From positions 62,001-126,000 of IMG/VR virus record IMGVR_UViG_3300032293_002041: a stretch of DNA of 64,000 bases; one strand, written 5' to 3'. Numbering within the stretch: position 1 is the first letter of the stretch; every line of letters begins with the position of its first letter. A program made the translations under genes and the position numbers. Under the pieces are notes generated by a model. It made no database searches. It was not told where the DNA came from and saw only the letters and a list, made by a program, of their open reading frames with translations. Shown piece after piece: positions 13,072 to 29,692 of the stretch.

Positions 13072-13107
13072 GATAATTTAATCAAAGATAATCAGGCATG
13101 AGGAATT

Positions 13108-13122
13108 GGTGTATTAATATAA
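13108..13122 (+). promoter_or_regulatory. GGTGTATW motif
   Basis: Intergenic GGTGTATTAATATAA upstream of ATG 13151. Confidence 0.55.
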
Positions 13123-13150
13123 TACCTATCCTTTTACAGAGATTATTTCT

Positions 13151-13689: not shown

Positions 13690-13691
13690 TC

Positions 13692-14090
13692 ATGGCAGAC
13701 AACGAAAAGTTAAAAGCTATTGCTATTAAAGTCCTAGAAAAATCTAATGTTCCCAAAGAAGATAATTATGGTTTTGCAATAGTGACTGTGTTGATGATTA
13801 TTAGTATAATATTAACTTGTATAAGAATATTGCAAGAATGTAATAAGAATAAATTATCGACTTCCTCAACAGAGTCTGATAAGTATAATCTATATGGAGA
13901 GCAATTAAAAACATTCAGCACAAAGCGTGGATGGTTTACCAAAATGAGAATTAAGAAAATCTTAAGAAGAGAGATGACCAGAGAAGACTACGAAAAATAT
14001 TCTTTTGCTATATTATCAGCTTTGCTAGATACAGGAGAAGTTCTCACGGATGAGGAGGTTATTACTTTAGTGGAGGCAGCCAATGTTTAA
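13692..14090 (+). CDS. Hypothetical membrane protein
   Basis: AGGAG SD; TM FAIVTVLMIISIILTCI. Confidence 0.6.
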   Translation: MADNEKLKAIAIKVLEKSNVPKEDNYGFAIVTVLMIISIILTCIRILQECNKNKLSTSSTESDKYNLYGEQLKTFSTKRGWFTKMRIKKILRREMTREDYEKYSFAILSALLDTGEVLTDEEVITLVEAANV

Positions 14091-14334
14091 TATTTTAGTA
14101 TGGTGTGTTTATGGCATATTTGTTGGCAGTATTGCTAAGAGTTTAGTTCCAGGCGAAGAAAATTTTGGATTCATCAAGACAGTTGCTTTAGGTGTAGCTG
14201 GTTCTTATATGGGTGGAGCATTACTTTATATGATTGGTCAGTATAGCACAGTAAGTCCAGCTGGTATATTTTCTGGGGTTGTTGGAGCTGTTATATCCTT
14301 GGTGTTGTACAATAAACTAGCGACATCAAAATGA
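14083..14334 (+). CDS. GlsB/YeaQ/YmgE (transglycosylase-associated) membrane protein
   Basis: W..GIFVGSIAK.LVPG, LGVAGSYMGG, GVVGAVISL; three TM helices. Confidence 0.8.
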   Translation: MFNILVWCVYGIFVGSIAKSLVPGEENFGFIKTVALGVAGSYMGGALLYMIGQYSTVSPAGIFSGVVGAVISLVLYNKLATSK

Positions 14335-14335
14335 C

Positions 14336-15885: not shown

Positions 15886-18798
15886 ATGGCTATATCTAAA
15901 TGGTGTGACATAAATTCATGGTTTAAAAATGATAATTTTTCAATACCTGCAAATAAAATTCCTATCAATGAGATTGATGATATAATTATAGAAGACAATG
16001 ATTATTTATTTAATGTTCTAGATAACTCATGTTATAGCCGTATTCCTTCTTTAGTTTGTAATAATTTATATGTCATCCCTGGTTTTCTTGATAATGTAGG
16101 AAATGATATAGATGTTATATTTTCTTGTCAAAAACTAATAGCCTCAAATGTTGTAATAAATTCTGGTATTATTTGTATAGATTGGGATAACAATATTTGC
16201 GAGTGGACTGTCAAATCATTCAGTGGATTCAATAAGTTTGTTAAATTATATTGTACATCAGAAGAAAACTTCTGGCTATCAAATAGTATATCTAGAGAAA
16301 TATATCTAAATTGTCCTCAATACATTTCTTTAAATGAGTGTACCTTCAACAAAGGACGTATACAAACAGAAAATGGTAAAATAAGTGGTACATCATTAAA
16401 TAATATAAATTTAATAGGCATTTATGATATAGTAAGTAGCGAGCTGATTAGTTGTACTGGCAATGGAGAATTTAAATTTTTAAATAATTCTAAAAATTCA
16501 TCAACTATATACGGAGATACATTATTTTTAGAAAGTAAGAATGATTCTAAAAGTATCATATATGGACCTAGTATTTTTTCTGGAATAAATAGCAGTATAA
16601 ATAGTGGTATTATTGTAGGTGATTGTACTTTTTTTAATTCACAAAATTTTGGTACAATATCGGGAAATGCAATTTTTACTAGTGGATCTATAAATAGCGG
16701 CGTTGTTACAAATGATGCTATTTTTTATTCTGGTACTATTAATTATGGAAATATTTTTGGAGATGCGATTTTTGAATATAGTAATAATTATGGTATGGTA
16801 TCTGGAAACGCTGTTTTAAATACAGGAAATAATTATGGTAAACTACTAGGTGGTTCTACATATATGTCATCTGGCTTGAATACCAAAGATGGTTTTATTA
16901 GCGGACTTCAAATTCAACTAATTAATTCTTCAAACGAAGGACAAATTAAATGTCCACTTGCTTCTACAGGAGCAGAGAGTTCTACTTGTTCTTTAATTGA
17001 ATCAGATAATCAAAATATTTTAGTTGCAAATACTATCAATACAAAGCGTATAATTACAACAGGCTACCCCAAACCATTCAATGGTCTATCGGGCACAATT
17101 ACTTGTGAGTCTATATCCATTGGAAGCGGATATTTTAATGGAGGAGATATAAGTTCTTTAGACTATACTTTTATGTCAACTTCTTCCAATGACGGTACGA
17201 TTGGTCCCGGAGTAGTTGTACCAATTTCAGAAACCACAAATAAACCAGATATTAGTAGGAGTTATCAGTCTGGAACTGTAGTATTTAATTCTGGTTGTCA
17301 TAACAATGGAATCATACTATCTCCATGTATATCAACTTTTAATAACGCTATTAATTTAGGAAATATTTCTGGCGGATGCATTTTTAATAAATTAAGCTAT
17401 AATTTATCAAGTATAAATGCTAATAATTATGATATTATTTATTTTAACGATATAAGCATTAATAAAGGTACTATATTATCTAGTTCTAGTCAAACAATTT
17501 TTAATGATAATTCATTAAATGATGGAACTATATACTCTTTTGTCTATTTTAATAATAGATCAAAAAATTCAGAGACAGGAAATATAAGATATGCTTCTTT
17601 TAAAGACTTATCACAAAACTCTGGCAGAATTGAAAATGGTTATTTTTTTAATGATGCAATTAATAATGGATTCATAACTAACAGTGGTGATTTCTTTGAC
17701 TCATCACAAAACCTATATCCAGCAAAGATTAGCGGTGTGGTTAATTTTTATAATGCTAGCATTAATTCTGGAGATATTAACTTAGCAAATGCTAAATTCT
17801 ACGATAACTCTAAAAACTATGACTATATATATGGTAACAGATCTAAATTATTTTTCGACAACTCACAGAATTTTGGATCTGTAAATAACGCTAAATTTTA
17901 TGACACGTCAGTAAATGTAAGGTTTCTGTTAGGAATTACTGAATTTTATAACAATAGTTCTAATAAGGGCTCATCTAGCTTTGATGATGATACATATTTC
18001 TATGATGACAGCACTAATAATGGACTAATAGATAAAGCTTTTTTCTTTGACCGAAGTACTAATCAGCATAATATAATAACATATAGTGGTCTTGATGGAT
18101 TAATTATATTTAATAATAGTTCACAAAATTTACAACCAATACAAAATAGAACAATTATTTTTAATGATACCAGCTCGAATCAAAGTACACTAAAAATTAT
18201 TCTAACACCTCAATATTCTCCTAGCGGTAATACTATTAACTTTAATACTCAGGCTGAGAATAGAAGCGAAATTATAGAATATAATTCAATTATTTTTTCT
18301 AGTGGAGCAGAGAATTACGGGGATATATCCGTTACTGGCACTGGCTGTATGCTAGTTTTTCAAGACGGTTCTATTAATTTAGGTTATATTAATATAAATA
18401 ATGATGTTCAATTTCAAAATGCAATAAATTCTGGTAGCATAAGAAATCAAGCACATTTTGAAGATAGCACAAATTTTGGAAAAGTTCCATATGCTACATT
18501 TAATAATAGTATTAATTCTGGTATAATTAACTATGGTATATTTATGCAAAATTCTACAAATTTAACTAATATAGCGAGTGGTGTATTTAATAATTCTAAT
18601 AATTCTGGCTATATTTTTCAAAACGGTATATTTAGCACTTATTCATCTAATCGAGGAAATGTAGGAAATAATGCAGATTTTACAGATTATTCAGCAAATT
18701 ATGGTATTATAAATGGAAATGGATCTTTTTTCACTTACTCATGCAATTATGGAACAGTACTAGGAGAGCTTCTGACAGATTCGTCGTGTACAGGTTAA
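15886..18798 (+). CDS. Asn/Ser/Gly-rich beta-solenoid repeat protein (putative virion fibre/adhesin)
   Basis: Many approximately 16-18 aa repeats of S.N.G.(I/V)..(A)..F, e.g. SQNFGTISGNAIF, SINSGVVTNDAIF, SNNYGMVSGNAVL. Confidence 0.65.
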   Translation: MAISKWCDINSWFKNDNFSIPANKIPINEIDDIIIEDNDYLFNVLDNSCYSRIPSLVCNNLYVIPGFLDNVGNDIDVIFSCQKLIASNVVINSGIICIDWDNNICEWTVKSFSGFNKFVKLYCTSEENFWLSNSISREIYLNCPQYISLNECTFNKGRIQTENGKISGTSLNNINLIGIYDIVSSELISCTGNGEFKFLNNSKNSSTIYGDTLFLESKNDSKSIIYGPSIFSGINSSINSGIIVGDCTFFNSQNFGTISGNAIFTSGSINSGVVTNDAIFYSGTINYGNIFGDAIFEYSNNYGMVSGNAVLNTGNNYGKLLGGSTYMSSGLNTKDGFISGLQIQLINSSNEGQIKCPLASTGAESSTCSLIESDNQNILVANTINTKRIITTGYPKPFNGLSGTITCESISIGSGYFNGGDISSLDYTFMSTSSNDGTIGPGVVVPISETTNKPDISRSYQSGTVVFNSGCHNNGIILSPCISTFNNAINLGNISGGCIFNKLSYNLSSINANNYDIIYFNDISINKGTILSSSSQTIFNDNSLNDGTIYSFVYFNNRSKNSETGNIRYASFKDLSQNSGRIENGYFFNDAINNGFITNSGDFFDSSQNLYPAKISGVVNFYNASINSGDINLANAKFYDNSKNYDYIYGNRSKLFFDNSQNFGSVNNAKFYDTSVNVRFLLGITEFYNNSSNKGSSSFDDDTYFYDDSTNNGLIDKAFFFDRSTNQHNIITYSGLDGLIIFNNSSQNLQPIQNRTIIFNDTSSNQSTLKIILTPQYSPSGNTINFNTQAENRSEIIEYNSIIFSSGAENYGDISVTGTGCMLVFQDGSINLGYININNDVQFQNAINSGSIRNQAHFEDSTNFGKVPYATFNNSINSGIINYGIFMQNSTNLTNIASGVFNNSNNSGYIFQNGIFSTYSSNRGNVGNNADFTDYSANYGIINGNGSFFTYSCNYGTVLGELLTDSSCTG

Positions 18799-18835
18799 CA
18801 GCTTGCTATGTTTCCCGTGATTGTTATTACATACC

Positions 18836-19297
18836 ATGAGACCAAATTGGCAGGAATACTTTACAGGATTAGCACACGCCATATCGGCGCGTAGCCACGA
18901 TATACAAACGCAACACGGATGTGTTATTACTGATTCTACAAATAGAATTTTGGGGGTTGGATATAATGGATTTCCAAAAGGGCTAGATGATACTCGACTA
19001 CCAAACACTAGACCAGATAAATATCCCTGGATGATTCATGCAGAACGTAATGCTCTCTCAAATTGCACAATAAGACCAGAGAATGGTATAGCATATGTTA
19101 CTGGTCAATCCTGTAATGATTGTATAATGGCCTTATGGCAGGAAGGCATTACAAAAGTATTTATGAGAAAAAATCATGGCACACATCTATTTGATGAAGA
19201 GCAACAAAAAAGATTTAACTTGTTTATACAAATGAGTGGCATTAATATAGAATATATCGATCCCGACCTATCCTGGATTAGGAATATCAAGGTATGA
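18836..19297 (+). CDS. dCMP deaminase (ComEB-like)
   Basis: RPNWQEYF, GVGYNG, IHAERNA, SCNDC zinc motif. Confidence 0.9.
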   Translation: MRPNWQEYFTGLAHAISARSHDIQTQHGCVITDSTNRILGVGYNGFPKGLDDTRLPNTRPDKYPWMIHAERNALSNCTIRPENGIAYVTGQSCNDCIMALWQEGITKVFMRKNHGTHLFDEEQQKRFNLFIQMSGINIEYIDPDLSWIRNIKV

Positions 19298-19929
19298 TTT
19301 CTTATTGTGTTACCGTATATAATGAAAGCCAAGAACTACCAAGACTAACAGACATCCTATCGACTGCTAAAAAAGAATCCGATGAGTTAGTTATAGTTCA
19401 GACATACAGAGATGAATCTGAGAAAAATACAGACTGGTATAAACTTATTGAAAAAACTAGCCAATTGTATGCTGATAAATATAGTGTTTTTCATTTTCAA
19501 AACGATTTTTCAACACTTAAAAACTATATGACTAATCAAGCATCTAATCCTTATATTTTTAATTTTGATGCTGACGAAGAAATGCAGATAAGTATTATTG
19601 AAGAATTAAGAAAACATATCCTAGAAAATGATATAGACTTGTATTATTTACCAAGAATCAATATTGTCGATGGATTAACAGAAGAAGATATAAAAAACTG
19701 GTCTTGGAAAATAAATGAAAAAGGATGGATAAATTGGCCAGACTACCAGCCAAGGATTTACAAAAATAATAACTTAATACGCTGGATTGGATTGGTGCAT
19801 GAGCACCTAGAGGGATTTAAATCTAGTGCCGCTATTTCAGACGATGGTAGAGTAGCTATTTTGCATAGAAAACACATAAATAAACAAAGAAGTCAAAATT
19901 CATTCTATAAAAATATGGATAAAAAATAA
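19294..19929 (+). CDS. Glycosyltransferase GT2-like
   Basis: TVYNE, FDADE (DxD), WPDYQPRIY, W.G.VHE. Confidence 0.85.
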   Translation: MISYCVTVYNESQELPRLTDILSTAKKESDELVIVQTYRDESEKNTDWYKLIEKTSQLYADKYSVFHFQNDFSTLKNYMTNQASNPYIFNFDADEEMQISIIEELRKHILENDIDLYYLPRINIVDGLTEEDIKNWSWKINEKGWINWPDYQPRIYKNNNLIRWIGLVHEHLEGFKSSAAISDDGRVAILHRKHINKQRSQNSFYKNMDKK

Positions 19930-20798
19930 TGTTCATGAATATTAAGGTTTACGGAGCTAAACAATATTGGTGTCAAGCCCCTCGTATAATGCAGGGGTTT
20001 GCTGGCTTAGGTCACAATGTCGGCCCCGCAGATAAGTATGATTTTGTATATGCTAATAACTTTCCTTATTCATCGAGAGATCCAGACTATCAAGACTGTG
20101 CATTAGATAATGACGTATTCAAAATATTTAATGTGTTAGATATTCCTACGCACATTAGTAGTTTCCCAATAGATCAGCTCAAGGATGAGTTATCCCATGC
20201 GTCGATAGTTACCTGCATTAGCGAGCCAGTCAAAAAACAACTACATGAAATTATAGGTATTGATGCCTATGTTATTGATAATCCAATTAAAGATATTTTT
20301 TATGACTCCTCTATAACCAAAGATATCAATTGTTTGTATGTTGGAAGAGCCACAGACCCAGTTAAAAGAACACACTTACTTGAACCACTATTTGAAGAAA
20401 TTATTTCTGTTGGCCCATTTGGTGGTATTGGTCATAATCTTGGAATGGTAAATGACGTTAACTTAAATCAACTCTATAATAGAGCTAAAATTGTACCATT
20501 ACCTTCTAGTTTTGAAGGACTAGGATTAACAGCCCTAGAAGCAATGGTATGTGGAGCTGTGCCTATTGTTTGTTCAGACAATCCCAATTCCGAATTATGT
20601 CCAGAGTTTTGTATTTGTGATCCTACCAAAGAATCAATATCAAATAAATATCAAGAAATATTGAATAATTTTGAAGAATACAATAAATATATAATGCTTT
20701 ATTGCAGTAATCAAATTCAACACAGATTTTCTAAGTTTCAAATTGCTAAAAATATTTTAAATCTACATAAGTTTTATACAGAAAAAACTAAATTATGA
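19929..20798 (+). CDS. Glycosyltransferase GT4-like
   Basis: YVGR, LYNRAKIVPLPSSFEGLGLTALEAMVCG (EX7E). Confidence 0.85.
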   Translation: MFMNIKVYGAKQYWCQAPRIMQGFAGLGHNVGPADKYDFVYANNFPYSSRDPDYQDCALDNDVFKIFNVLDIPTHISSFPIDQLKDELSHASIVTCISEPVKKQLHEIIGIDAYVIDNPIKDIFYDSSITKDINCLYVGRATDPVKRTHLLEPLFEEIISVGPFGGIGHNLGMVNDVNLNQLYNRAKIVPLPSSFEGLGLTALEAMVCGAVPIVCSDNPNSELCPEFCICDPTKESISNKYQEILNNFEEYNKYIMLYCSNQIQHRFSKFQIAKNILNLHKFYTEKTKL

Positions 20799-21388
20799 TA
20801 ACTTACTCAGATGCGTATCAAGATGTTTTTGTTTTAAAACTTTTCAATACTATTGGATACTATTTAGATATAGGATCCTCTGATGGTGTTACGAAGAATA
20901 ATACACTATTGCTAGAACAAAACGGGTGGTCGGGATTACTGTTTGATTATAATGAAAGCCACATACAGACAGCACAACAGACAAGAAATAGTAAAGCATT
21001 TCTGTGTGATTTATCTCAACCAGAAATTCTGTCCAATATTCTAGATAAAGAAAACTGTCCAGAAACTATCGATTATATATCATTAGATATTGACGATGCA
21101 AGCCTTATCTCTCTCAAGCACTTTCCATTGCATAGATATAGGTTTAAATTTTTAACTTTTGAGCACGACATCTATGCTCAGAGACCAGAATGCATAGCTC
21201 GTAAAAATATAACACCTGTTCTTCTTGATAAATTTGGATATGTTAAGATCGCAGATAATGTGACATGCAATGACCTACCCTACGAAGACTGGTATATAGA
21301 TCCACAATATTTTGATATCAACAGATTTACTGACATTATTAATCAAACTAACTTATCTTATCAAGAAATCTACAAGAGACTCAAATAA
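20795..21388 (+). CDS. FkbM-like methyltransferase
   Basis: QDVFV, GYYLDIGSSDG, NNTLLLE..GWSGL, IDYISLDID, TFEHD. Confidence 0.75.
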   Translation: MITYSDAYQDVFVLKLFNTIGYYLDIGSSDGVTKNNTLLLEQNGWSGLLFDYNESHIQTAQQTRNSKAFLCDLSQPEILSNILDKENCPETIDYISLDIDDASLISLKHFPLHRYRFKFLTFEHDIYAQRPECIARKNITPVLLDKFGYVKIADNVTCNDLPYEDWYIDPQYFDINRFTDIINQTNLSYQEIYKRLK

Positions 21389-21457
21389 TGAAGATAAAAA
21401 CCTTAACAACAATCAACACATATACAGTATTACTAAAAATATTCTAAACTTATACTC

Positions 21458-22108
21458 ATGAATAATAACTATTATAATTTTTTCGATAGACAACCAATAG
21501 AGATATATGAAAATAGTCATCAACTTAGGCTAGATTATTTTGTTGAGGATTTTAAATTAAAACAACTTAATAACTTAAGAATTGGTGATTTTGGATGTGG
21601 ATATGGAATGTTGTACAATAGACTACCTAAGGATCAAAATAATACCTTCTATGGATGGGACGGATACGACAACAAAACAGCATCAGAAGTTTGCGAATAT
21701 TTTGTTACTAATCTTGATTCAAAATTTGCAGAAATATTTCTAGAAAAAAATGCACCAATTGATATTGCCTTTTGTCTAGAAACTATAGAACACGTAACTA
21801 ACCCATACAATTTATTGTTTGAGATCAAACAAATCTTAAAGCCTGGAGGAATTTTATATGTTACTATACCACATAGTAGCATCACTCACAATACTATTTA
21901 TCCAGGATTAATTTATCCTCCAGAAAATTTTGATACCTTTTTACGACAAATGGCTTTTGAAATTATGGACAGAAGAATACACCAAGCAGCTTTCGTACAG
22001 GTAGTATATACGTTGCGTAATTTAGGATGGGATTATTCAAAAATGTTATGGCCAAAACCAGAAGAAAAATTTAAAAATATTCCTCCTCATATATTTGTTA
22101 ATATTTAG
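21458..22108 (+). CDS. Class I SAM-dependent methyltransferase
   Basis: DFGCGYG, ETIEHV, ILKPGGILYVTIP. Confidence 0.85.
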   Translation: MNNNYYNFFDRQPIEIYENSHQLRLDYFVEDFKLKQLNNLRIGDFGCGYGMLYNRLPKDQNNTFYGWDGYDNKTASEVCEYFVTNLDSKFAEIFLEKNAPIDIAFCLETIEHVTNPYNLLFEIKQILKPGGILYVTIPHSSITHNTIYPGLIYPPENFDTFLRQMAFEIMDRRIHQAAFVQVVYTLRNLGWDYSKMLWPKPEEKFKNIPPHIFVNI

Positions 22109-22161
22109 ACAAAGAATAATCAAATGTCGTTTACACACCAAAAGAAGGAGTTGTTCTATCT

Positions 22162-22698
22162 ATGACCACTATCAATAAATACGTAAGCCACCTGATAAAA
22201 ACAGAAGCTGGCAGAGACCATATATTTAAACATTGTTTGGATATGTTTAATCATAATCCAGTTAATATCCTAGAGATAGGAGCAGCTAGAGACCTATCTG
22301 ATCAAGCCAGATTTGGAGACGGATGGAGTAGTATTTTTTGGGCTAGATATATAGAACAATATGGAGGCAGACTTGATATAGTAGATATAGATAATCAAGC
22401 ACTAGAAAATTGCAAAAAATTAGTTCATGGAATTAATGCGAAAATAAACTTTTTAAATGATGACGCATATAATCATATCTCTGATAGTACATATGATTTG
22501 ATATATTTAGATGGATCAGATGATCCACAAGAGATGCTTAGGCAATTTAATAAAATAGATAGAACACAAACAGTAATTTTATGTGATGATTTTAATAGTA
22601 AGGGCTCAGCATTAAGATTAGCATATCCTGTTTTTGATTTATTTTATCTTACCGGAAGTAGATTTGAGATGGCGGTATATAATAAAGTATCAAATTGA
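22162..22698 (+). CDS. Class I SAM-dependent methyltransferase (Methyltransf_24-like)
   Basis: ILEIG, VDID, YDLIYLDG, ILCDD. Confidence 0.75.
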   Translation: MTTINKYVSHLIKTEAGRDHIFKHCLDMFNHNPVNILEIGAARDLSDQARFGDGWSSIFWARYIEQYGGRLDIVDIDNQALENCKKLVHGINAKINFLNDDAYNHISDSTYDLIYLDGSDDPQEMLRQFNKIDRTQTVILCDDFNSKGSALRLAYPVFDLFYLTGSRFEMAVYNKVSN

Positions 22699-22708
22699 AG
22701 AGCTTTTA

Positions 22709-23569
22709 ATGCAAAAAACTTTTGTAGGATTTAATCATGGGCAGTATGGTGATTTGTTCATAGGCTTAACAGCGGCCTCGGTCTTAAAACAAAAATATCC
22801 AGAGTCTAGACTCATATACTCAATTAATAAAAAGTTTTTAGATTGTAAAGAAGCATTTTTACATAGCGATAACATAGATGATATAATCATATGGAATAAA
22901 TATGACAATTGGCCAGGAGAGCAAGATGTATCAATGATACAAAATCTCATAGATATCTATGGGGAAAATTTACATGTATTTGATCCAAATGCTAAACATA
23001 AAGAAATAAACTGGTATTTATATAGACACCAGACAACAGAAAATTGTTTAATGCACAATCTTCCAGAACCATCGGAAGAACAAATGGATTTCTCATTAAA
23101 TACGCCTGGACAAATATGTAGACAAAATTATATAACAATAGCTCCTTTTACTAGTTTTGGAAGCCCGAAAAACTTAACGTATAAAATATTAGAAGAAGTT
23201 CAAAAATTTGCTTTGCAATTCAATCTTCCTATTGTCCAGCTTGGTGGACCAAATGATTCTACAATAGAAGGAGCTACAAAATTTAATGGTACATATTTTG
23301 AATCAGTTAAAGTAATGTTATCTAGTAGATTTTTAATATCGGCTGATACTGGAATGATATGGGCTGCGTCAGCATATAACCATCCAGTTATTGGGTTTTA
23401 TGGTTATTCCTTCTATTCAGGTGCTACAACTGCTATTAATTGGCAACCTAAAAATCATAATCAGATATCTATAGAATCGTACACTATAAACGACATAGAT
23501 TTATCAGACTTATATAATATTCTAGAATATGTCAATAAAACATCAATCAGAAGTAATATTATTGTTTAA
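22709..23569 (+). CDS. GT9 / ADP-heptose:LPS heptosyltransferase-like
   Basis: YGDL at N-terminus, LKQKYP, IVQLGG, ISADTGMIWAASAYNHPVIGFYG (D(S/T)G..H.A.A...P motif with H replaced by W). Confidence 0.7.
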   Translation: MQKTFVGFNHGQYGDLFIGLTAASVLKQKYPESRLIYSINKKFLDCKEAFLHSDNIDDIIIWNKYDNWPGEQDVSMIQNLIDIYGENLHVFDPNAKHKEINWYLYRHQTTENCLMHNLPEPSEEQMDFSLNTPGQICRQNYITIAPFTSFGSPKNLTYKILEEVQKFALQFNLPIVQLGGPNDSTIEGATKFNGTYFESVKVMLSSRFLISADTGMIWAASAYNHPVIGFYGYSFYSGATTAINWQPKNHNQISIESYTINDIDLSDLYNILEYVNKTSIRSNIIV

Positions 23570-23944
23570 TAATATTGTTGTAGAAATATTAGGTATCCTT
23601 GAAAAATAAATTAATGATTCTACATATTCTGACCCTATTACTTTTTTATTTGCATAGTCATCTCCAACTACCATAACTGATATGCTGTGATTTTTAATAG
23701 CTTTTATCAGAGATATTTCAGAATCAAAAACCACAACATCATCTACCCACTTAATGCTCAAAAGCATTTCTTTTCTATATATATCAGAATTAATAGGTCT
23801 ATTTAGACCCTTCATTTCATTAACCCTAGTGTCGCTATCGATACCGACTATCAATCTATCTCCTAAAGATTTAGCATATTTTAAAAGTCTAATATGCCCT
23901 ACATGTAAAATATCAAAACATCCATTGACCCATATATTTTTCAT
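23543..23944 (-). CDS. Heptose-1-phosphate adenylyltransferase (HldC/RfaE domain II-like)
   Basis: NGCFDILHVGH, LIVGIDSD, KG.NRPIN, GDDY, STT. Confidence 0.85.
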   Translation of the reverse strand: MKNIWVNGCFDILHVGHIRLLKYAKSLGDRLIVGIDSDTRVNEMKGLNRPINSDIYRKEMLLSIKWVDDVVVFDSEISLIKAIKNHSISVMVVGDDYANKKVIGSEYVESLIYFSRIPNISTTILLNNNITSD

Positions 23945-24699
23945 GGTGTGGTTACCCCAAATTTTTCTACCACCATAGAAGAACACAAATTAGCATAATT
24001 GATACTTTCATCAATATCTTTGTTTTCCAAGAACTTAACCACCAGACCAGCCATAAAAGTATCCCCTGCTCCACAAACATCTCTTACTTCTATTTTTTTT
24101 GTTGGATAGTTTTTAACGACACTACCCTCATAGAGAGTAGCTCCATTCTCTCCTTTGGTTACAATTACCCGACAATATTTACTAATATCTTCGATGTCAA
24201 CAATATTCTGCTTTAATTCTGTGCTATTAATCTTCAAAAAACTTACATATCTAATAAAATCTTTAATCTTTTTTTTTGTATCTATAAACACATAGCAGGA
24301 TTTTTTAATTTTTTTACATATGTCAATAATACTTGTTTCAGATAAAAATCCTTTACAATAGTCAGAGAATACTATAACATCATATGAGTCAAAATCATAT
24401 TGTTTAATATCGATAGGCTCACATGAATCATTGATATCTTCTCTAAATACTATAGTATTATATCTATAGTCTATAAATCTTCTTTTAATAATAGTAGTAT
24501 TATTTGTTATTAGAGTAACATCCAAATCCGAATTCATTGCTAATATATTGTTATATACATTATGTGCCATACCCATATTAGATGTTTTTTCCTCGCTGGT
24601 TTTGAAACACAGGGCGGCAGCTTCCGGGCAAACCCTGTCGCATACCCCATAAACATATTCATCTATACAAGACTCTCCTACTACAGCAATTTTATTCAT
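23941..24699 (-). CDS. Heptose-7-phosphate kinase (HldA/RfaE domain I-like, PfkB family)
   Basis: VVGESCIDEYVYG..R.CPEA, SDYCKG, VTKGENG, DVCGAGDTF. Confidence 0.85.
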   Translation of the reverse strand: MNKIAVVGESCIDEYVYGVCDRVCPEAAALCFKTSEEKTSNMGMAHNVYNNILAMNSDLDVTLITNNTTIIKRRFIDYRYNTIVFREDINDSCEPIDIKQYDFDSYDVIVFSDYCKGFLSETSIIDICKKIKKSCYVFIDTKKKIKDFIRYVSFLKINSTELKQNIVDIEDISKYCRVIVTKGENGATLYEGSVVKNYPTKKIEVRDVCGAGDTFMAGLVVKFLENKDIDESINYANLCSSMVVEKFGVTTP

Positions 24700-24988
24700 T
24701 AAAAAAACTTTCTGAATTTATTGATTTATCATCTATATACAGATCATAATGAGGTTTATTAAATAATATATTATGTCTTCTGCATCCCCAAAAGTCCAAC
24801 TGATTTTTGGTTAATTCAGACCAATCTTTACCACTCTTAGAACCTCTTGCTGTCCAGTAAACTATTTTATGTCCTTGGTCATATAGGTTGTTTATTGCTC
24901 TGATTCTGTCATACAATGGACTACTATTGTCGTAATCGCTGTTTTCTGTCAAACAGATTGTATTATCAATATCTATATAGTATATCAT
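24692..24988 (-). CDS. Small HAD-family phosphatase
   Basis: DIDNT (motif I), WTARG, KP.YD.YIDDK. Confidence 0.8.
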   Translation of the reverse strand: MIYYIDIDNTICLTENSDYDNSSPLYDRIRAINNLYDQGHKIVYWTARGSKSGKDWSELTKNQLDFWGCRRHNILFNKPHYDLYIDDKSINSESFFNE

Positions 24989-25359
24989 ATAGCTTCTATT
25001 ATTCTATAAGAATCAGAATCCTCATGAAATGTTGATATTTCTATAAAATCACAAGGATAATGTGATTGAGCAGTAAATCTGTGCGCTGTCATGGGATTAA
25101 TAGTAAAGGATTGACCCTTTTCTAAAATGATGCTTTTTACTAAGTGTTCTTCGGGATTTGCTTTCCATTCTTCTTTATCTAGTGAAGTAGAGTATTGTAG
25201 CTTTAATGTGCCACTAATAATATAAAAAGTTTCTTTTTTATTCTTGTGATAATGTACTGAACACCAGCGATTTGGAACCACATGCAAATGCTTTCCGCAA
25301 TATAAATTATTATTCTCTATCCAAATTTCATATCCCCATTTTTTTTGTACAAAATTCAT
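24985..25359 (-). CDS. Cupin sugar-isomerase-like protein
   Basis: KKWGYE, CSVHYHKNKKETFYI, AHRF, IEIST.H.DSDSYR. Confidence 0.75.
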   Translation of the reverse strand: MNFVQKKWGYEIWIENNNLYCGKHLHVVPNRWCSVHYHKNKKETFYIISGTLKLQYSTSLDKEEWKANPEEHLVKSIILEKGQSFTINPMTAHRFTAQSHYPCDFIEISTFHEDSDSYRIIEAI

Positions 25360-25444
25360 AAATATTCCTATTCTTGTTTTACTTGGCTGTTTCTCTATAA
25401 TAAAAAAAGTCAATGAACCATCTACTTAAAAATCTAATAATAAA

Positions 25445-26593
25445 ATGAATATTTCAACAATAGTGGGTCTTAAAAATAATCTAGAATACACTAAATATTT
25501 TTATACTAAATTTCGTCAACACTATCCGTCAAATGAGCTATGTTTTGTTTCCTATGGTAGTAACGACGGAACAAATGAATGGCTTGAAGATATATCAAAA
25601 ACAGATCTATATGTAAAATCCTATAGCAGCAACACCTCCCTCAGTCTGTCTGCCACATACAATAAAGGCGTAACATTAGCCACCAAAAAATATATAGTAT
25701 TTTGTCATAATGATATTGTAATAGCTAAAAATTTTTTAGAAAACATATATAAACATTTAGATAAAAACGAGGTAATTTGCTACACAGTAGTCGAGCCTCC
25801 TGTTTTTGAAAACGAACACCCAGGAAAAATTGTTAAAGACTTTGGCACTAACATAGAAAATTTCCAAGAAAAATTATTCGAATTATTCTGCGATAACGAG
25901 CAACAATTAAAAGCAAATGAAACAATCAATGGGTCTTCTTTTTTTATTGCTTTATGCAAAGACATGTTTCTAGGTATGGGGGGATTAGATACACTCTTCA
26001 ATCCGATGTTTTGCGAAGACGAGGATATGATACGAAGACTAGAGCTTATGGGAAAAACCATTAAGACATCTCTAGATGCTTTATGCTATCATTTTGTTAG
26101 CAAAACATCAAGATTCTCAACAGACTATGAAAATAATTCTAAAGAAATAGAATATCAGTCTAATAGAAACTTTATTAGAAAATGGGGATCAACAGTAAGA
26201 TGTCCATATTATACTAAATCTTTAGTAGTTAAAAATTGCGATCTTTCATTATTGGAACTTTTAGAACCATGGTGTAATAATATATATATAGAAAAAGATA
26301 AAATTAATATCTATACAGAATATCTTTCTACGGAACAAGCGTATACAAAAATTGATCTTTCTAAAAAATTGCACACCTTTCAAAATAACAACCTATTATC
26401 CGAAGACAGTATCATAATATCACTTGATGGATCAAAAATGAATGAACGATCTTTTTCAGCTATGCATCAAATACCTAATATTGTTAAAAACAATAATAAA
26501 ACTGGTATATTTAAATTAGATATCTATACTATCCAAGTTCAAAATTTACTAGAGCACCAAAATCATCTGATAAGCTGTAATAATGATATTTAA
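25445..26593 (+). CDS. Glycosyltransferase GT2-like
   Basis: GSNDGT, YNKG, FCHND, GGLDTLF.PMFCEDED, HFVSKT. Confidence 0.8.
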   Translation: MNISTIVGLKNNLEYTKYFYTKFRQHYPSNELCFVSYGSNDGTNEWLEDISKTDLYVKSYSSNTSLSLSATYNKGVTLATKKYIVFCHNDIVIAKNFLENIYKHLDKNEVICYTVVEPPVFENEHPGKIVKDFGTNIENFQEKLFELFCDNEQQLKANETINGSSFFIALCKDMFLGMGGLDTLFNPMFCEDEDMIRRLELMGKTIKTSLDALCYHFVSKTSRFSTDYENNSKEIEYQSNRNFIRKWGSTVRCPYYTKSLVVKNCDLSLLELLEPWCNNIYIEKDKINIYTEYLSTEQAYTKIDLSKKLHTFQNNNLLSEDSIIISLDGSKMNERSFSAMHQIPNIVKNNNKTGIFKLDIYTIQVQNLLEHQNHLISCNNDI

Positions 26594-27401
26594 ACATTTA
26601 TGGAAAAAAGAAAAAATAATTCCAAACCAAAAAGATCTATTAGAAAAAATAGACCTAGAAAATAAAAACTTATTAAAATTAAATCTTATTTTTCATTTTT
26701 ATTGCATAGATCATGAAAAAGTTCATTATGCTATAGCAAAATTAAAAAATGTTTTACATATTTTTAACGGATACAAAATTATTACAGTATCCTCTCCAGA
26801 TAATAAATTTCACAATAATCATATTTTTCAAAAAATAGTTGATTCATTCAAATCTTCTGATATTTATATCATACCAGTACCAAACTCTAACATACTGAAA
26901 GAATCAGAACATTTTTTTTATAGATCAGGGCCACTAATGTCTAGTCTTTTAAAAAATGATCAACATAAAAATTTCATATTTTTTGGCCATACAAAGGGAT
27001 GCAGTCATTCAGAAAAAAATTATGCAATTACCTGTTGGGTTAATACCTTGTGGAAATACAATATAGATCTATTTTATAATTTAATTAAACCACAGATAGA
27101 ATCTAATAATTACCAGTTTATCGGATGCTTAAGGACTACTAAAGATTGTTATTTTGATAGTAAGTTTCATTATTCTGGTACTTTTTTTTGGTTTGATGCG
27201 GCTATTTTACAAAACGAAAATTGGCATCAGCCTCATGATCATTTACTAAGTCTAGAAATGTGGCCAGGATTAATTTCTGATATGTCTAAATCATTATGTC
27301 TTTTTGATAGCGGAGATGGAAATAAGTATCAAAATGATCTATGGCAGAATCTGGCATTTCGCAGACAGATAGATGCTCCGCACACTGTGCCAAAACAATA
27401 A
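26583..27401 (+). CDS. Hypothetical glycan-related protein
   Basis: FGHTKG, HYSGTFFW and LEMW motifs resemble glycosyltransferase-associated proteins of glycan loci. Confidence 0.45.
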   Translation: MIFKHLWKKEKIIPNQKDLLEKIDLENKNLLKLNLIFHFYCIDHEKVHYAIAKLKNVLHIFNGYKIITVSSPDNKFHNNHIFQKIVDSFKSSDIYIIPVPNSNILKESEHFFYRSGPLMSSLLKNDQHKNFIFFGHTKGCSHSEKNYAITCWVNTLWKYNIDLFYNLIKPQIESNNYQFIGCLRTTKDCYFDSKFHYSGTFFWFDAAILQNENWHQPHDHLLSLEMWPGLISDMSKSLCLFDSGDGNKYQNDLWQNLAFRRQIDAPHTVPKQ

Positions 27402-27499: not shown

Positions 27500-29692
27500 A
27501 TGTCAGCACTACAAGAGCTTCAAAATTACACTTTCGTCAGTAAATATGCTAGATGGTTAAGTGATCAAAATAGGCGAGAGACTTGGAAAGAAGCTGTTGA
27601 TAGGGTCAGAGAAATGATGCACATCAGGTATGACTCTTTTGGAATTAGCGAAGAGATTGATTGGGCTTACGACATGATGTATAAGAAAAAGGTTCTTGGC
27701 AGTCAAAGAGCTTTGCAGTTCGGCGGAGATCCTATCCTAAAAAGACACGCTAAAATATATAACTGTACTAGTTCATATTGTGATAGGTTAAGATTTTTTC
27801 AAGAATGTTTTTGGCTGTTGCTGTGCGGAAGCGGTACAGGATTCAGTGTTCAAAAGCATCATGTATCTAAGCTACCATCACTAGAGCATGAGGTGCAAGA
27901 TGGACAAGCTACTAAGTATGTTATCGAAGATAGTATCGAAGGCTGGGCAAATGCTTTGGGCGTTCTGTTAAGCTCTTATTTTAGCAAACCAGTAGATGAA
28001 TTTAAGCAGTATAAGAATAGTCATATAGTATTCGATTACTCAAGTATTAGACCAAAGGGAGCAGCACTAGCTTCTGGAGTAGGCAAAGCTCCGGGCTATG
28101 AACCTCTTGCAAATGGCTTAGAAAAAATTAGAACACTATTAGATAGATGTATTAAGGACGGCCAAAAGAAACTTAGGCCCATAGATGCATATGACATTGT
28201 GATGCATAGTAGCGATGCTGTATTGTCTGGAGGTGTACGCCGAAGTGCTTCATTAGCTCTATTTAGTCATGATGATGAGGATATGGCTAAGGCTAAGACA
28301 GGAAATTGGTACATAGATAATCCTCAAAGAGCAAGAAGTAATAATTCTGCCTTACTGCTAAAAGATTCAACATCTTTTGAAGAATTTTCCACACTGATGC
28401 AATCTGTCAAGGAGTTTGGCGAACCGGGATTTATCTGGAGTGAATCAACAGAGATGATTTTTAATCCATGCGTTGAAATTGGTATGTGGCCAATAGATGA
28501 ACAAACAAATAAATCAGGATGGCAGGGATGTAATCTATCTACAATCAATTGCTCATCAGTAGCCGACGAAGAAGATTTTTATGAATCATGTAAAGCTGCA
28601 GCTATTATAGGAACACTCCAAGCTGGTTTTACCACGCTAGACTATTTAGGAGACATTAGTCAAAGAATCTTTGAAAGAGAAGCTCTTCTTGGAGTATCCT
28701 TAACAGGAACCATGGAAAAACATGAGTTAGTATTATCAGAAAAAGTCCTTACTAAAGGAGCAAAGATCGCTGTAGAAACAAACAAGAAGATAGCATCTAA
28801 GATCAATATTAACCAAGCTGCAAGAGTAACTTGTTTAAAGCCAGAGGGGACTTCTTCTAGTATGCTAGGAACTAGTTCTGGAATCCATCCTCATCATGCA
28901 AAGAGATACATTCGCCATGTACAAGCTAATGTTCTTGAAGCGCCCTATCTATACTTTAAGAAATTAAATCCTCAAGCTTGTGAAAAATCAGTTTGGTCAG
29001 CGAATAATACTGACGAGGTAGTTAAATTTCCAATAGAGGTTCCAGATGGAGCCAAACTTAAGAATCAATTACCCGCTGTAGAGATGCTCAAGGTTGTAAA
29101 AGATACACAAAAGAACTGGGTGCAGTCTGGCAAGAATAGATCATTATGTACACAAGAATATTTAAGTCATAATGTTAGCAATACTGTCACAGTTAAACCA
29201 GAAGAGTGGGATTCTGTAACCAAGTATATTTATGATAATCGAAAATATTTTGCAGGGATATCTCTAATACCACAGAGTGGAGACAAAGATTATCCTCAGG
29301 CTCCGTTTACAACTGTTTATACTAGTAGAGAAATTGTTAAGGAATATGGAGATGCTGCACTATGGTGTTCTGGATTAATTGAACTAGGATTAAATGCATT
29401 TAATAATAATCTATGGGCAGCTTGCGATTATGTTTCGATGAATCAAGCAAAAGAAGGCGACGACGAACATAAGTTAAAGTTCATGAACAAGATGAAAAAT
29501 TTTGCTGTAAAATATTTTGAAGATGACATAAAGAGATTAACATATTGTATGAAAGATGTTTACAACTGGAAGATCTACTGCGATCTATTTGAGAGCTTTA
29601 AGAAGGTAGACTATACCCAGCTCTCCGAAACAGAAGACAACACTGCTGGTATTGAAGAGATTAGTTGTGCTGGTGGAGCATGTCTTCTATAA
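27500..29692 (+). CDS. nrdJ: Class II (adenosylcobalamin-dependent) ribonucleotide reductase, monomeric RTPR type
   Basis: KYARW...RRETW, YNC, GGVRRSA, NPCVEI (radical Cys), GCNL, KPEGT, C-terminal CAGGAC; no NrdB nearby. Confidence 0.85.
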   Translation: MSALQELQNYTFVSKYARWLSDQNRRETWKEAVDRVREMMHIRYDSFGISEEIDWAYDMMYKKKVLGSQRALQFGGDPILKRHAKIYNCTSSYCDRLRFFQECFWLLLCGSGTGFSVQKHHVSKLPSLEHEVQDGQATKYVIEDSIEGWANALGVLLSSYFSKPVDEFKQYKNSHIVFDYSSIRPKGAALASGVGKAPGYEPLANGLEKIRTLLDRCIKDGQKKLRPIDAYDIVMHSSDAVLSGGVRRSASLALFSHDDEDMAKAKTGNWYIDNPQRARSNNSALLLKDSTSFEEFSTLMQSVKEFGEPGFIWSESTEMIFNPCVEIGMWPIDEQTNKSGWQGCNLSTINCSSVADEEDFYESCKAAAIIGTLQAGFTTLDYLGDISQRIFEREALLGVSLTGTMEKHELVLSEKVLTKGAKIAVETNKKIASKININQAARVTCLKPEGTSSSMLGTSSGIHPHHAKRYIRHVQANVLEAPYLYFKKLNPQACEKSVWSANNTDEVVKFPIEVPDGAKLKNQLPAVEMLKVVKDTQKNWVQSGKNRSLCTQEYLSHNVSNTVTVKPEEWDSVTKYIYDNRKYFAGISLIPQSGDKDYPQAPFTTVYTSREIVKEYGDAALWCSGLIELGLNAFNNNLWAACDYVSMNQAKEGDDEHKLKFMNKMKNFAVKYFEDDIKRLTYCMKDVYNWKIYCDLFESFKKVDYTQLSETEDNTAGIEEISCAGGACLL

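What the first reader, a model, noticed from the sequence alone, without database searches (positions are those of the whole stretch)
15886..27401. Possible virion glycosylation (heptosylation) system: Ser-Gly-rich beta-solenoid next to a GT9 and nucleotide-heptose island
Seen: a 970-aa solenoid with about 28 Ser-Gly dipeptides (hand count). SG also recurs in the 9081, 9302 and 9575 proteins and the N-terminal part of the 2716-aa protein. It is followed by GT2, GT4, three methyltransferases, a GT9-like heptosyltransferase, HldA/HldC-like genes and another GT2. Known: AAH/TibC heptosylate Ser on beta-helical autotransporters using ADP-heptose, and some phages glycosylate their virions. Inference: this phage builds a methylated, heptose-containing glycan on its own structural proteins, possibly at an S-G sequon.
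Basis: partly seen in the sequence, partly recalled or inferred. Interest (0 to 1): 0.7.

Follow-up and report, generated by a model that had tools for sequence, protein, structure and literature searches.

The report
Swappable heptose-glycan cassette in lake jumbo phage
An uncultured 229-kb lake phage carries a recently exchanged 5.5-kb gene cassette for making and transferring a methylated heptose sugar, sitting in a glycan-gene slot that differs between related phages and lies next to a very fast-evolving rod-like protein; what the sugar is attached to is not shown by the sequence.

Summary
The 970-aa ORF has 28 Ser-Gly dipeptides (11.8 expected, z about 5) and is predicted to be an all-beta solenoid. 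Downstream lie a dCMP deaminase, GT2, GT4, two clear and one probable methyltransferase, a GT9-fold transferase, a four-gene nucleotide-heptose set and another GT2.

New points:
- The GT9-like protein has a clear GT9 fold. It is nearer LPS heptosyltransferases than TibC/Aah and lacks the extra N-terminal part of those enzymes. Its clade is almost confined to phage-like contigs and is always paired with a methyltransferase.
- The heptose genes match the T4-GC 304-307 genes of cyanomyoviruses. A cupin stands where GmhA would be.
- In nine related jumbo phages the backbone genes are 70-96% identical. The solenoid is only 26-30% identical to the window's. The gene content between dCMP deaminase and RNR differs by phage.
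- The heptose/GT9 cassette (19929-25444) is an insertion, 92-99.75% nt identical to a phage whose flanks are 70-81% identical.
- SG enrichment is family-wide. It occurs in phages without GT9 or heptose genes and is poorly conserved by position, so it is not a heptose-specific sequon.

The acceptor is unproven. I favour phage-protein glycosylation (0.4) over host-envelope remodelling (0.3) and DNA glycosylation (0.08). Direct TibC-like Ser heptosylation at SG is unlikely (0.07).

The parts
15886..18798 (+). 970-aa Asn/Ser-rich beta-solenoid with a conserved Cys/Trp-rich N-terminal part of about 110 aa. It is hypervariable between related phages. It is a candidate fibre and a candidate glycan acceptor; neither is proven.
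18821..19297 (+). dCMP deaminase, a backbone gene that marks the left edge of the variable glycan slot (83-92% identical in relatives)
19294..19929 (+). GT2a, a 211-aa GT-A glycosyltransferase with the DxD motif kept. Its only PDB sequence match is the Listeria flagellin O-GlcNAc transferase GmaR. It is present in 6 of the 10 relative loci tabulated (L003, L009, L010, L011, L016; L013 duplicates L012).
19929..20798 (+). GT4 glycosyltransferase, first gene of the inserted cassette. It is conserved with MT23 and GT9-like in another phage lineage.
20795..21388 (+). 197-aa protein, homologous to the C-terminal domain fused to GT9-like proteins in other phages. That domain is a probable FkbM-type methyltransferase. 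The gene is absent from the otherwise near-identical cassette of L003.
21458..22108 (+). SAM methyltransferase (Methyltransf_23/11). In every other lineage examined it lies directly upstream of the GT9-like gene.
22162..22698 (+). SAM methyltransferase (Methyltransf_24, O-methyltransferase type)
22709..23569 (+). GT9-fold glycosyltransferase of about 286 aa, a probable heptosyltransferase from a clade found almost only on phage-like contigs. The listed ORF starts at TTG 22634; homologues support a start near 22709.
23543..23986 (-). HldC-like heptose-1-phosphate nucleotidyltransferase (best family rfaE_dom_II). The likely start is the ATG at 23944.
23941..24699 (-). Short HldA-like heptose-7-phosphate kinase (PfkB). 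Its best PDB match is HldA, entry 4e84.
24692..24988 (-). 98-aa HAD-type phosphatase (phrog_1238; EcbF/BcbF-like), the probable heptose-1,7-bisphosphate 7-phosphatase
24985..25413 (-). Cupin related to D-lyxose/D-mannose ketol-isomerases, the probable sedoheptulose-7-P isomerase standing in for GmhA. The likely start is the ATG at 25359.
25445..26593 (+). GT2b, a 382-aa GT-A glycosyltransferase. Its only PDB sequence match is GalT1 of serine-rich-repeat adhesin glycosylation. In L011 it lies directly after GT2a.
26583..27401 (+). 272-aa protein of unknown function, the last gene of the slot. It is conserved with GT2a/GT2b in L003, L009, L010 and L011.
27500..29692 (+). Class II ribonucleotide reductase, a backbone gene that marks the right edge of the variable slot

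Best explanation
The region is a variable glycan slot in an uncultured family of aquatic jumbo phages of about 190-230 kb.

SHOWN:
- The slot always lies between a conserved dCMP deaminase and the ribonucleotide reductase, just downstream of a hypervariable beta-solenoid gene.
- Its gene content differs from phage to phage.
- In this phage a minimal set (GT2a, GT2b, a 272-aa protein) has been split by a 5.5-kb insertion, 19929-25444. One arm of the insertion is GT4, a probable FkbM-like methyltransferase, two SAM methyltransferases and a GT9-fold transferase. The convergent arm is cupin, HAD, HldA-like kinase and HldC-like nucleotidyltransferase.
- The cassette was exchanged recently between diverged phages.

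INFERRED MECHANISM:
1. The cupin isomerises sedoheptulose-7-P to D-glycero-D-manno-heptose-7-P, in place of the absent SIS-type GmhA.
2. The kinase makes heptose-1,7-bisphosphate.
3. The HAD enzyme removes the 7-phosphate.
4. The nucleotidyltransferase makes ADP-heptose. The nucleotide itself is not established.
5. The GT9-like enzyme transfers heptose. The tightly linked methyltransferases O-methylate it.
6. GT2a, GT2b and GT4 add the other sugars of a short oligosaccharide.

MOST LIKELY ACCEPTOR (inference, not shown): a soluble phage-encoded protein glycosylated in the cytoplasm. The neighbouring Asn/Ser-rich solenoid is the first candidate and other large S/G-rich proteins are further ones. 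A GmaR-like GT-A enzyme would start the glycan on Ser/Thr and the GT9-like enzyme would extend it, rather than heptosylating Ser directly.
For: Enzymology:
- GT9 fold: family profile against PDB gives 3tov 1.2e-7 and WaaF 8e-5. The model has pLDDT 93. VIA Z is 22.5 WaaF, 21.6 WaaC, 18.2 TibC, and the next families that are not GT9 relatives score 11.6 or less. The top 10 Swiss-Prot structural hits are LPS/LOS heptosyltransferases or putative GT9 proteins.
- Kinase: best family rfaE_dom_I and best PDB match HldA 1.6e-11.
- Nucleotidyltransferase: best family rfaE_dom_II, 1.4e-30.
- HAD: phrog_1238, 2.8e-29.
- Cupin: nearest D-lyxose/D-mannose isomerases. No SIS protein is found in the genome.
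- All four heptose genes are 35-49% identical to the P-SSM2 / S-SM2 cassette.

Slot and mobility:
- Synteny tables.
- L011 has only GT2a-GT2b-p272 in the slot.
- The cassette is 92-99.75% nt identical to L003 while the flanks are 70-81%.

GT9 and methyltransferase coupling: MT23 lies directly upstream of GT9-like in L005, L018, L019 and L020, and GT9 fused to a p197-like domain occurs.

Towards a soluble, phage-encoded protein acceptor:
- No transmembrane segment, flippase, polymerase, ligase or Gtr-type gene in the island.
- GT2a matches only GmaR (2.4e-7) and GT2b only GalT1 (7e-7) among PDB sequences.
- Two other GT4 genes (1511-2569, 47499-48623) are conserved at 62-85% in relatives of every island type, which suggests a conserved acceptor.
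- The GT9-like clade is nearly absent from 185,579 species genomes: 3 hits, all MAG contigs.
- No route to a hydroxymethylated base was found, and the GTs are acidic.
Against: - No direct evidence identifies the acceptor.
- The solenoid is not shown to be in the virion. It has no PHROG or Pfam structural hit and no significant fold match. Its neighbours are papain-like peptidase-like proteins, small membrane proteins and nucleotide-metabolism genes.
- The known acceptors of the closest GT9 structures are LPS cores.
- The GmaR and GalT1 matches are modest (about 1e-7) and GT2 is a huge family.
- Solenoid and cassette are not co-inherited: the window and L003 share the cassette but their solenoids are 27% identical.
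- Type C islands lack GT2a.
- In another phage lineage the GT4-MT-GT9 trio has no adjacent solenoid-sized gene.
- The kinase, nucleotidyltransferase and HAD scores are below NCBIfam equivalog cut-offs, so the sugar and the nucleotide are inferred.
Confidence: 0.4

Rival explanations
1. Host-envelope remodelling. The enzymes act at the inner face of the host membrane on lipid A-core, O-antigen or capsule intermediates. The host then exports the altered glycan, which changes the cell surface during infection and blocks superinfection or re-adsorption of progeny. This is the usual reading of LPS genes in marine myophages.
For: The closest structures and reviewed proteins to the GT9-like enzyme are LPS/LOS heptosyltransferases. 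One source names a 91%-identical homologue ADP-heptose:LPS heptosyltransferase. The same heptose cassette in cyanomyoviruses, and GT/rfaE genes in the host recognition cluster of pelagimyophages, are read this way (PMC7029224). Phage-to-phage variation in island content would fit strain-specific host surface glycans.
Against: There is no membrane protein, initiating phosphoglycosyltransferase, flippase, polymerase, ligase or Gtr-type component. The GT9-like clade is only 11-19% identical to bacterial GT9 enzymes and is almost absent from bacterial genomes, unlike a recently captured host gene. It is acidic (net -10), whereas the acceptor would be anionic lipid A-Kdo. Core GT4s are conserved across phages with different islands. 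To my knowledge this reading has not been tested experimentally for lytic aquatic phages.
Confidence: 0.3
2. DNA hypermodification. The island puts heptose-containing glycans on phage DNA bases to escape restriction, as shown for a phage gene cluster (HAD/kinase, cytidylyltransferase, GT-B) that makes mono- and di-heptosyl-5hmC.
For: The enzyme set resembles that cluster (bioRxiv 10.1101/2023.12.21.572611). The island is embedded in nucleotide-metabolism genes here: dCMP deaminase, whose ORF overlaps the start of GT2a by 4 nt, then RNR and dUTPase. In a second phage lineage it lies between RNR and RecA/DnaB/primase/DnaE.
Against: The complete genome has no ThyA-family hydroxymethylase and no C5 DNA methyltransferase. 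No Tet/JBP dioxygenase was found either, but the control for that search was silent, so it is weak. An ordinary ThyX is present. The GT9-like model does not resemble T4 beta-GT within the top 50 hits. All four GTs are acidic. The methyltransferases are small-molecule/sugar types, not DNA methylase families.
Confidence: 0.08
3. One reading: the GT9-like enzyme works like TibC/Aah and heptosylates Ser side chains of the beta-solenoid directly, at an S-G sequon.
For: TibC, Aah and BAHTCr are significant structural matches. The solenoid is a Ser-rich beta-helix with real SG excess. SG excess is shared by other large S/G-rich proteins of the genome.
Against: LPS-type GT9 enzymes match better (Z 21-22.5 vs 18). 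The alignments start at residue 87-97 of the autotransporter heptosyltransferases, so their N-terminal region is missing. Only one Cys is nearly invariant in the clade, so a multi-Cys iron site is unlikely. SG excess is equal in phages without GT9 or heptose genes. Only 28% of SG sites are positionally conserved. The clade is tightly coupled to methyltransferases and a GT4, which suggests glycan extension.
Confidence: 0.07
4. Another acceptor: a host protein, or a free methylated oligosaccharide or small molecule made during infection.
For: All enzymes are soluble and no acceptor is identifiable. GT-methyltransferase arrays of similar style occur on contigs with no evident fibre genes.
Against: I know of no precedent in phages. 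It does not explain the fixed position next to the hypervariable solenoid across the family.
Confidence: 0.1

Closest known systems
Cyanomyovirus heptose cassette, T4-GC 304-307 (Prochlorococcus phage P-SSM2 PSSM2_309-312; Synechococcus phage S-SM2)
   Same: The same four gene families are present: a nucleotidyltransferase of about 140 aa, a 252-aa PfkB kinase, a small HAD annotated 'phosphoheptose isomerase', and a cupin annotated 'cysteine dioxygenase' in P-SSM2. Identity is 35-49%. In P-SSM2 the genes lie between tail-fibre genes.
   Different: The host phage lineage is different: not T4-like, with DnaE-type polymerase and class II RNR. Gene order relative to transcription is reversed. Here the cassette is linked to a GT9-fold transferase and methyltransferases, and no cyanophage record matched that transferase.
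LPS heptosyltransferases of CAZy family GT9 (WaaC, WaaF, WaaQ, WaaU, OpsX; PDB 2gt1, 1psw, 3tov)
   Same: GT-B fold with Z 21-22.5 over about 260 residues. G-D, K and D-T-G motifs are invariant in the clade.
   Different: Identity is only 11-19%. The protein is shorter (about 286 aa) and acidic. The single sequence scores below the Pfam GT9 threshold. The clade is almost confined to phage-like contigs and is always paired with, or fused to, a methyltransferase.
Autotransporter heptosyltransferases (TibC, Aah, BAHTCr) acting on beta-helical passengers
   Same: GT9-related fold (Z about 18). The system would combine an ADP-heptose donor with a nearby Ser-rich beta-helix.
   Different: The N-terminal region of about 90 residues is missing, and no conserved multi-Cys motif is seen. 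The solenoid's N-terminus shows no obvious signal peptide, its strongest 19-residue hydrophobic stretch is weak, and no autotransporter barrel domain was detected. LPS-type enzymes are the closer match.
Host recognition cluster of pelagimyophages and cyanomyophages (PMC7029224)
   Same: A hypervariable region combines fibre-like genes with glycosyltransferases and rfaE-type sugar-nucleotide genes. Here a hypervariable solenoid lies next to a variable glycan slot.
   Different: The phage lineage and the position differ: here the region sits in the nucleotide-metabolism and replication arm. The slot is small (3.3-8.2 kb) with sharp conserved borders. That paper reads the genes as O-chain modification.
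Mycobacteriophage virion glycosylation (Freeman et al. 2023, as cited in PMC12619734)
   Same: Phage-encoded soluble glycosyltransferases would decorate the phage's own structural proteins.
   Different: In mycobacteriophages the glycans are shown on the C-termini of capsid and tail-tube subunits. Here nothing is shown, the candidate acceptor is a solenoid, and the phage makes its own heptose donor.
Phage 5hmC-sugar hypermodification clusters (Pyle et al., bioRxiv 10.1101/2023.12.21.572611)
   Same: The combination of HAD/kinase, cytidylyltransferase-family enzyme and GT-B transferase is known to place heptose on a phage macromolecule.
   Different: No 5hmC-generating enzyme was found in the genome. 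The transferase has a GT9 fold, not a T4 beta-GT-like one.

Membership tests
CAZy GT9 / Pfam PF01075 heptosyltransferase | GT-B fold that matches GT9 structures better than any other GT family | tested here: met
   VIA Z is 22.5 (WaaF), 21.6 (WaaC, 3tov) and 18.2 (TibC). After the plant NDH PnsB1 subunits (Z 17.5-17.8), the next families score 11.6 or less. The Foldseek top 31 PDB chains include 30 GT9 heptosyltransferase chains. The family profile hits 3tov at 1.2e-7.
CAZy GT9 / Pfam PF01075 heptosyltransferase | Score above the Pfam gathering threshold | tested here: not met
   19.9 bits against a cut-off of 22 for the window protein. Only 2 of 24 homologues carry a precomputed PF01075 hit.
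CAZy GT9 / Pfam PF01075 heptosyltransferase | Catalytic and donor-binding residues (N-terminal Asp after Gly, a Lys, a D-T-G motif) | tested here: inconclusive
   G17-D18, K157 and D216-T217-G218 are invariant in 17 clade members. Their equivalence to the WaaC residues rests on my memory of that enzyme, not on a residue-level superposition.
Autotransporter heptosyltransferases (TibC/Aah family) | Extra N-terminal region and an iron-binding multi-Cys motif | tested here: not met
   Structural alignments begin at residue 87-97 of Aah, BAHTCr and TibC. The phage protein is about 286 aa against 391-409. Only C116 is nearly invariant.
Autotransporter heptosyltransferases (TibC/Aah family) | Acceptor is a secreted autotransporter passenger | tested here: not met
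   The solenoid shows no obvious N-terminal signal peptide and no strongly hydrophobic stretch. Pfam detected no barrel or any other domain.
ADP-heptose pathway (GmhA, HldA, GmhB, HldC) | HldA-type heptose-7-P kinase and HldC-type adenylyltransferase | tested here: inconclusive
   The best-scoring families are rfaE_dom_I (128 bits) and rfaE_dom_II (106 bits), both below the equivalog cut-offs of 345 and 181.5. The kinase's best PDB match is HldA. The nucleotidyltransferase also resembles CDP-alcohol cytidylyltransferases.
ADP-heptose pathway (GmhA, HldA, GmhB, HldC) | SIS-domain sedoheptulose-7-P isomerase GmhA | tested here: not met
   No SIS_2 match in the complete genome. A cupin related to lyxose/mannose isomerases is present instead.
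Cyanomyovirus heptose cassette T4-GC 304-307 | Homology of all four genes | tested here: met
   HldC-like 41-49%, HldA-like 35-42%, HAD 46-48% and cupin 38% identity to P-SSM2 / S-SM2.
Phage DNA sugar-hypermodification cluster | An enzyme that makes a hydroxymethylated pyrimidine (ThyA-type hydroxymethylase, or C5 methyltransferase plus TET) | tested here: not met
   PF00303 and PF00145 are absent, with working controls. PF12851 is absent but its control was silent. ThyX is present.
Serotype-converting O-antigen modification (Gtr-type) | Membrane proteins GtrA/GtrB/GtrC or a membrane acetyltransferase | tested here: not met
   No island protein has a 19-residue stretch with mean Kyte-Doolittle hydropathy above 1.8. 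No such Pfam families were hit.
Phage virion glycosylation (mycobacteriophage type) | Glycan detected on virion proteins | not testable with these tools
   No isolate or proteome exists. No cultured relative was found in the phage collection.
Host recognition cluster of aquatic myophages | Hypervariable region combining fibre-like genes and glycan genes | tested here: inconclusive
   Hypervariability of the solenoid and of the slot is shown. That the solenoid is a fibre is inferred only from its fold, and the phage is not T4-like.

The most novel reading that the evidence does not exclude
Aquatic jumbo phages carry a swappable 'glycan serotype' locus. Cassettes such as this one, built around a phage-specific GT9 clade with its own methyltransferases and heptose supply, would decorate a hypervariable beta-solenoid fibre and perhaps other S/G-rich virion proteins with variable methylated glycans. 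Virion surface glycans would then be an exchangeable, arms-race trait of phages, as O-antigens are for bacteria.
Probability: 0.25. Interest if true: 0.75.

Novelty: new variant of a known kind. Interest (0 to 1): 0.5.

Why it matters
Glycosyltransferase and LPS-like genes are common in aquatic phages and are usually read as host-surface modifiers, to my knowledge without experimental test. This locus is a compact case that could be tested. It has sharply bounded, recently exchanged cassettes in a fixed slot, a self-sufficient heptose supply, a phage-specific GT9 clade fused or paired with methyltransferases, and a candidate acceptor next door. Finding the acceptor would settle what such islands do. 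It would also show whether virion glycosylation, known from mycobacteriophages and giant viruses, is widespread in environmental phages. The cupin standing in for GmhA would be a new entry point to heptose biosynthesis if confirmed.

Tried and rejected
- Complex prediction of GT2a, GT9-like and solenoid residues 460-760 gave no answer (score 0.00). This is no evidence for or against binding.
- Fold searches of the solenoid model found nothing significant. The best PDB match was EtpA at E 0.04, among generic beta-helix adhesins. The one BFVD hit had a TM-score of only 0.16.
- tblastn of the solenoid against 50,697 phage records found nothing. The GT9-like protein hit only a 100-aa stretch in two Campylobacter phages. 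The polymerase and RNR have no close cultured relative.
- The promoter and terminator scan of 13-28 kb was no better than shuffles.
- PDB sequence searches with the island GT4 and a core GT4 gave only the generic nucleotide-binding motif. The 197-aa protein gave nothing.
- The 272-aa protein is not homologous to the same-sized last gene of the slot in L006/L007 (20-22% identity).
- N-x-S/T sequons in the solenoid are not enriched (25 vs 28.7 expected), so an N-glycosylation reading was dropped.
- I could not establish whether this phage belongs to the 'moraphages' (PMC12619734). The paper's text holds no IMG/VR identifiers.
- The Freeman et al. 2023 paper is not held.
- I first assumed a marine origin from the Tara homologues. 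The sequencing-run search shows lake-water and freshwater metagenomes.

Full report
**Where the window lies.** The window is bases 62001-126000 of a 228,972-bp virus record with direct terminal repeats, rated complete. GC content is about 33%. The cassette sequence is held by lake-water and freshwater metagenomes. No cultured relative was found in 50,697 phage records.

**The observation.** ORF 15886-18798 encodes 970 aa.
- It has 28 SG dipeptides against 11.8-11.9 expected, z about 5. SG is its most over-represented dipeptide, while GS is not enriched.
- AlphaFold2 with 15 homologues gives an all-beta model of short periodic strands, with pLDDT above 90 over about residues 470-960.
- The repeat is roughly F-x3-S-x-N-x-G-x-I with a period of 15-17 residues.
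- 10 of the 28 SG sites are N-S-G and 5 are I-S-G, so they sit just before the periodic Gly.
It needs three additions: a dCMP deaminase separates the solenoid from the island; a small HAD phosphatase and a cupin complete the sugar-nucleotide set; and the third methyltransferase (20795-21388) is only inferred.

**The GT9-like enzyme.**
- Alone it scores below the Pfam threshold (19.9 vs 22 bits).
- 24 homologues exist, all metagenomic, and they indicate a start near 22709.
- Their profile hits GT9 structures: 3tov 1.2e-7, WaaF 8e-5.
- The model has pLDDT 93. It aligns with WaaF, WaaC and 3tov at Z 21-22.5 and with TibC at Z 18.2. After the plant NDH PnsB1 subunits, the next families score 11.6 or less.
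- Among reviewed proteins, LPS/LOS heptosyltransferases rank above Aah, BAHTCr and TibC. The alignments to the latter three start at their residue 87-97.
- It therefore has a GT9 fold but is not an autotransporter-type heptosyltransferase.
- In 185,579 species genomes the clade appears only three times, each on a MAG contig.
- In every other context examined a Methyltransf_23 gene lies directly upstream. In some phages the GT9-like domain is fused to a domain homologous to the window's 197-aa protein.

**The sugar-nucleotide arm.**
- The kinase's best family is rfaE domain I and its best PDB match is HldA.
- The nucleotidyltransferase's best family is rfaE domain II. It also resembles CDP-alcohol cytidylyltransferases.
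- The 98-aa HAD matches phrog_1238 and a capsule-biosynthesis phosphatase family.
- The cupin is nearest D-lyxose/D-mannose isomerases. The genome has no SIS-type GmhA.
- All four genes are homologous to a cassette long annotated in cyanomyoviruses (P-SSM2 PSSM2_309-312, S-SM2). In P-SSM2 that cassette lies between tail-fibre genes.
- The short kinase family is large, with 731 clusters at 90% identity.
- ADP-heptose synthesis is thus a well-supported inference. The nucleotide, and the role of the cupin as a substitute for GmhA, remain inferred.

**Comparative genomics.** This is the main new result.
- 18 solenoid homologues exist, nearly all 26-31% identical to the window protein (one matches at 41% over 17% of the query), on contigs of up to 230 kb.
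- In nine related loci the flanking genes are highly conserved: p307 86-92% (except L003, a partial 42% match), p132 76-88%, dCMP deaminase 83-92%, RNR 89-97%, PhoH 69-96%.
- Every solenoid is 26-30% identical to the window's, with a conserved Cys/Trp-rich N-terminal part of about 110 aa.
- The stretch between dCMP deaminase and RNR is 3.3-8.2 kb and holds different genes in different phages:
  - GT2, GT17, methyltransferase and GT2 in L006;
  - two Methyltransf_24 genes, GT2 and an epimerase in L007;
  - a GT4-like gene, UDP-galactopyranose mutase and Methyltransf_24 in L008;
  - only GT2a, GT2b and p272 in L011, the closest backbone.
- Relative to L011, the window carries an insertion at 19929-25444 made of two convergent arms.
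- That cassette is 92-99.75% nt identical to phage L003, whose flanks are 70-81% identical and whose solenoid is 27% identical. The cassette was therefore exchanged recently and independently of the solenoid.
- Two other GT4 genes in the window are conserved at 62-85% in relatives of every island type.

**The SG motif.**
- SG excess is equally strong in solenoid homologues whose phages lack GT9 and heptose genes: P0033 z 5.3, P0031 z 7.6, P0037 z 5.3.
- Only 28% of the window's SG sites carry [ST]G in homologues, and only S232, S259 and a few others are conserved.
- Across the genome SG is 2.05 times expectation in 13 large S/G-rich proteins and 1.15 times in the rest. TG is 1.43 times expectation and GS 1.11 times in the S/G-rich set.
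- The enrichment is real and directional, but it behaves as a property of the fold class, not as a heptose-specific sequon.
- It could still mark generic O-glycosylation sites. That cannot be tested here.

**The acceptor.**
- For a soluble, phage-encoded protein:
  - the island has no transmembrane segment or export/ligation gene;
  - GT2a matches only GmaR and GT2b only GalT1 among PDB sequences, and both are enzymes of protein O-glycosylation by my knowledge of them;
  - the core GT4s are conserved across island types;
  - the GT9 clade is phage-specific;
  - glycan genes sit beside fibre-like genes here, in P-SSM2 and in pelagimyophage host recognition clusters.
- For the host envelope: the nearest GT9 enzymes act on LPS cores, and this is the usual reading in the literature.
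- For DNA: a phage cluster with a similar enzyme set heptosylates 5hmC, and the island lies among nucleotide-metabolism and replication genes in two lineages. However, the genome lacks a ThyA-type hydroxymethylase and a C5 methyltransferase, no TET was found, it has an ordinary ThyX, and the GTs are acidic.
- The solenoid is not shown to be a virion protein. Its neighbours are papain-like peptidase-like proteins and small membrane proteins, and its fold matches are non-specific.
- A complex prediction gave no answer.

**Verdict.** The proposed S-G heptosylation sequon and the TibC analogy are not supported. Virion or phage-protein glycosylation remains the reading I favour, at 0.4, with host-envelope remodelling close behind. 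The feature is a new variant of a known kind: aquatic-phage glycan islands and host recognition clusters, and the cyanophage heptose cassette. What is notable is the sharply bounded swappable slot, the phage-specific GT9-methyltransferase module and the cupin in place of GmhA.

Noticed in passing
window 40942-45340: The DnaE-type DNA polymerase (phrog_405) is split into two ORFs, 40942-42816 and 43712-45340, which match the N- and C-terminal parts of the profile. A 232-aa ORF (43021-43719) lies between them. This could be a split gene or a mobile-element insertion.
   Followed up: no
window 12148-15883: Just upstream of the solenoid lie two proteins that resemble viral papain-like C1 peptidases by language-model features (p307, 86-92% conserved in all relatives except L003, and p515, 49-75% identical). 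Between them are two small hydrophobic proteins: p132, and p83 whose homologues in relatives carry a Transgly_assoc hit. The set could be a lysis or processing module.
   Followed up: partly
window 45835-53384: A second glycosyltransferase cluster holds two GT4 genes, one of them conserved at 65-85% in five relatives. It is followed by about 5 kb of unannotated genes in a low-GC stretch (0.29).
   Followed up: partly
window 371-2569: An IMPDH/GMP-reductase-family gene lies directly upstream of a third conserved GT4 (62-85% identical in relatives).
   Followed up: partly
window 27500-29692 vs L006, L008: The RNR at the right edge of the slot is a single-chain class II enzyme here and in several relatives. 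L006 and L008 have a two-subunit class I enzyme at the same position, so the RNR type has been replaced within one phage family.
   Followed up: partly
window 33397-35445: A 682-aa protein gives mixed PHROG hits along its length (terminase large subunit, DnaC-like loader and primase, then UvsX-like recombinase). It may be a fused or intein-bearing P-loop protein.
   Followed up: no
window 55128-63278 (-) and genome beyond the window (window coordinates 68750-135124): There is a run of very large minus-strand ORFs. The 2716-aa one lies in the window; those of 1441, 4061, 902, 663 and 569 aa lie beyond it, are S/G-rich and have a roughly two-fold SG excess. They are presumably fibre or structural proteins. 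None is a BLAST-detectable paralogue of the solenoid.
   Followed up: partly
L005, L018, L020: A second, unrelated phage lineage places a variable glycan island (GT2, GT4, MT23, GT9-like with or without a methyltransferase fusion, epimerase) between class I RNR and RecA/DnaB/primase/DnaE. Glycan islands beside RNR thus recur in two lineages.
   Followed up: partly
L023 (MAG contig labelled Flavobacterium sp.): A dense array of GT2, GT4, GT34, GT-methyltransferase fusions, Methyltransf_24 genes, an epimerase and GDP-mannose dehydratase surrounds a GT9-like homologue. Whether the contig is phage or bacterial was not resolved.
   Followed up: partly
window 4896-7394: A sigma-factor-like protein (4896-5480) and a ClpP-like or head-maturation protease (6723-7394) lie in the same plus-strand block as the nucleotide-metabolism genes.
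   Followed up: no
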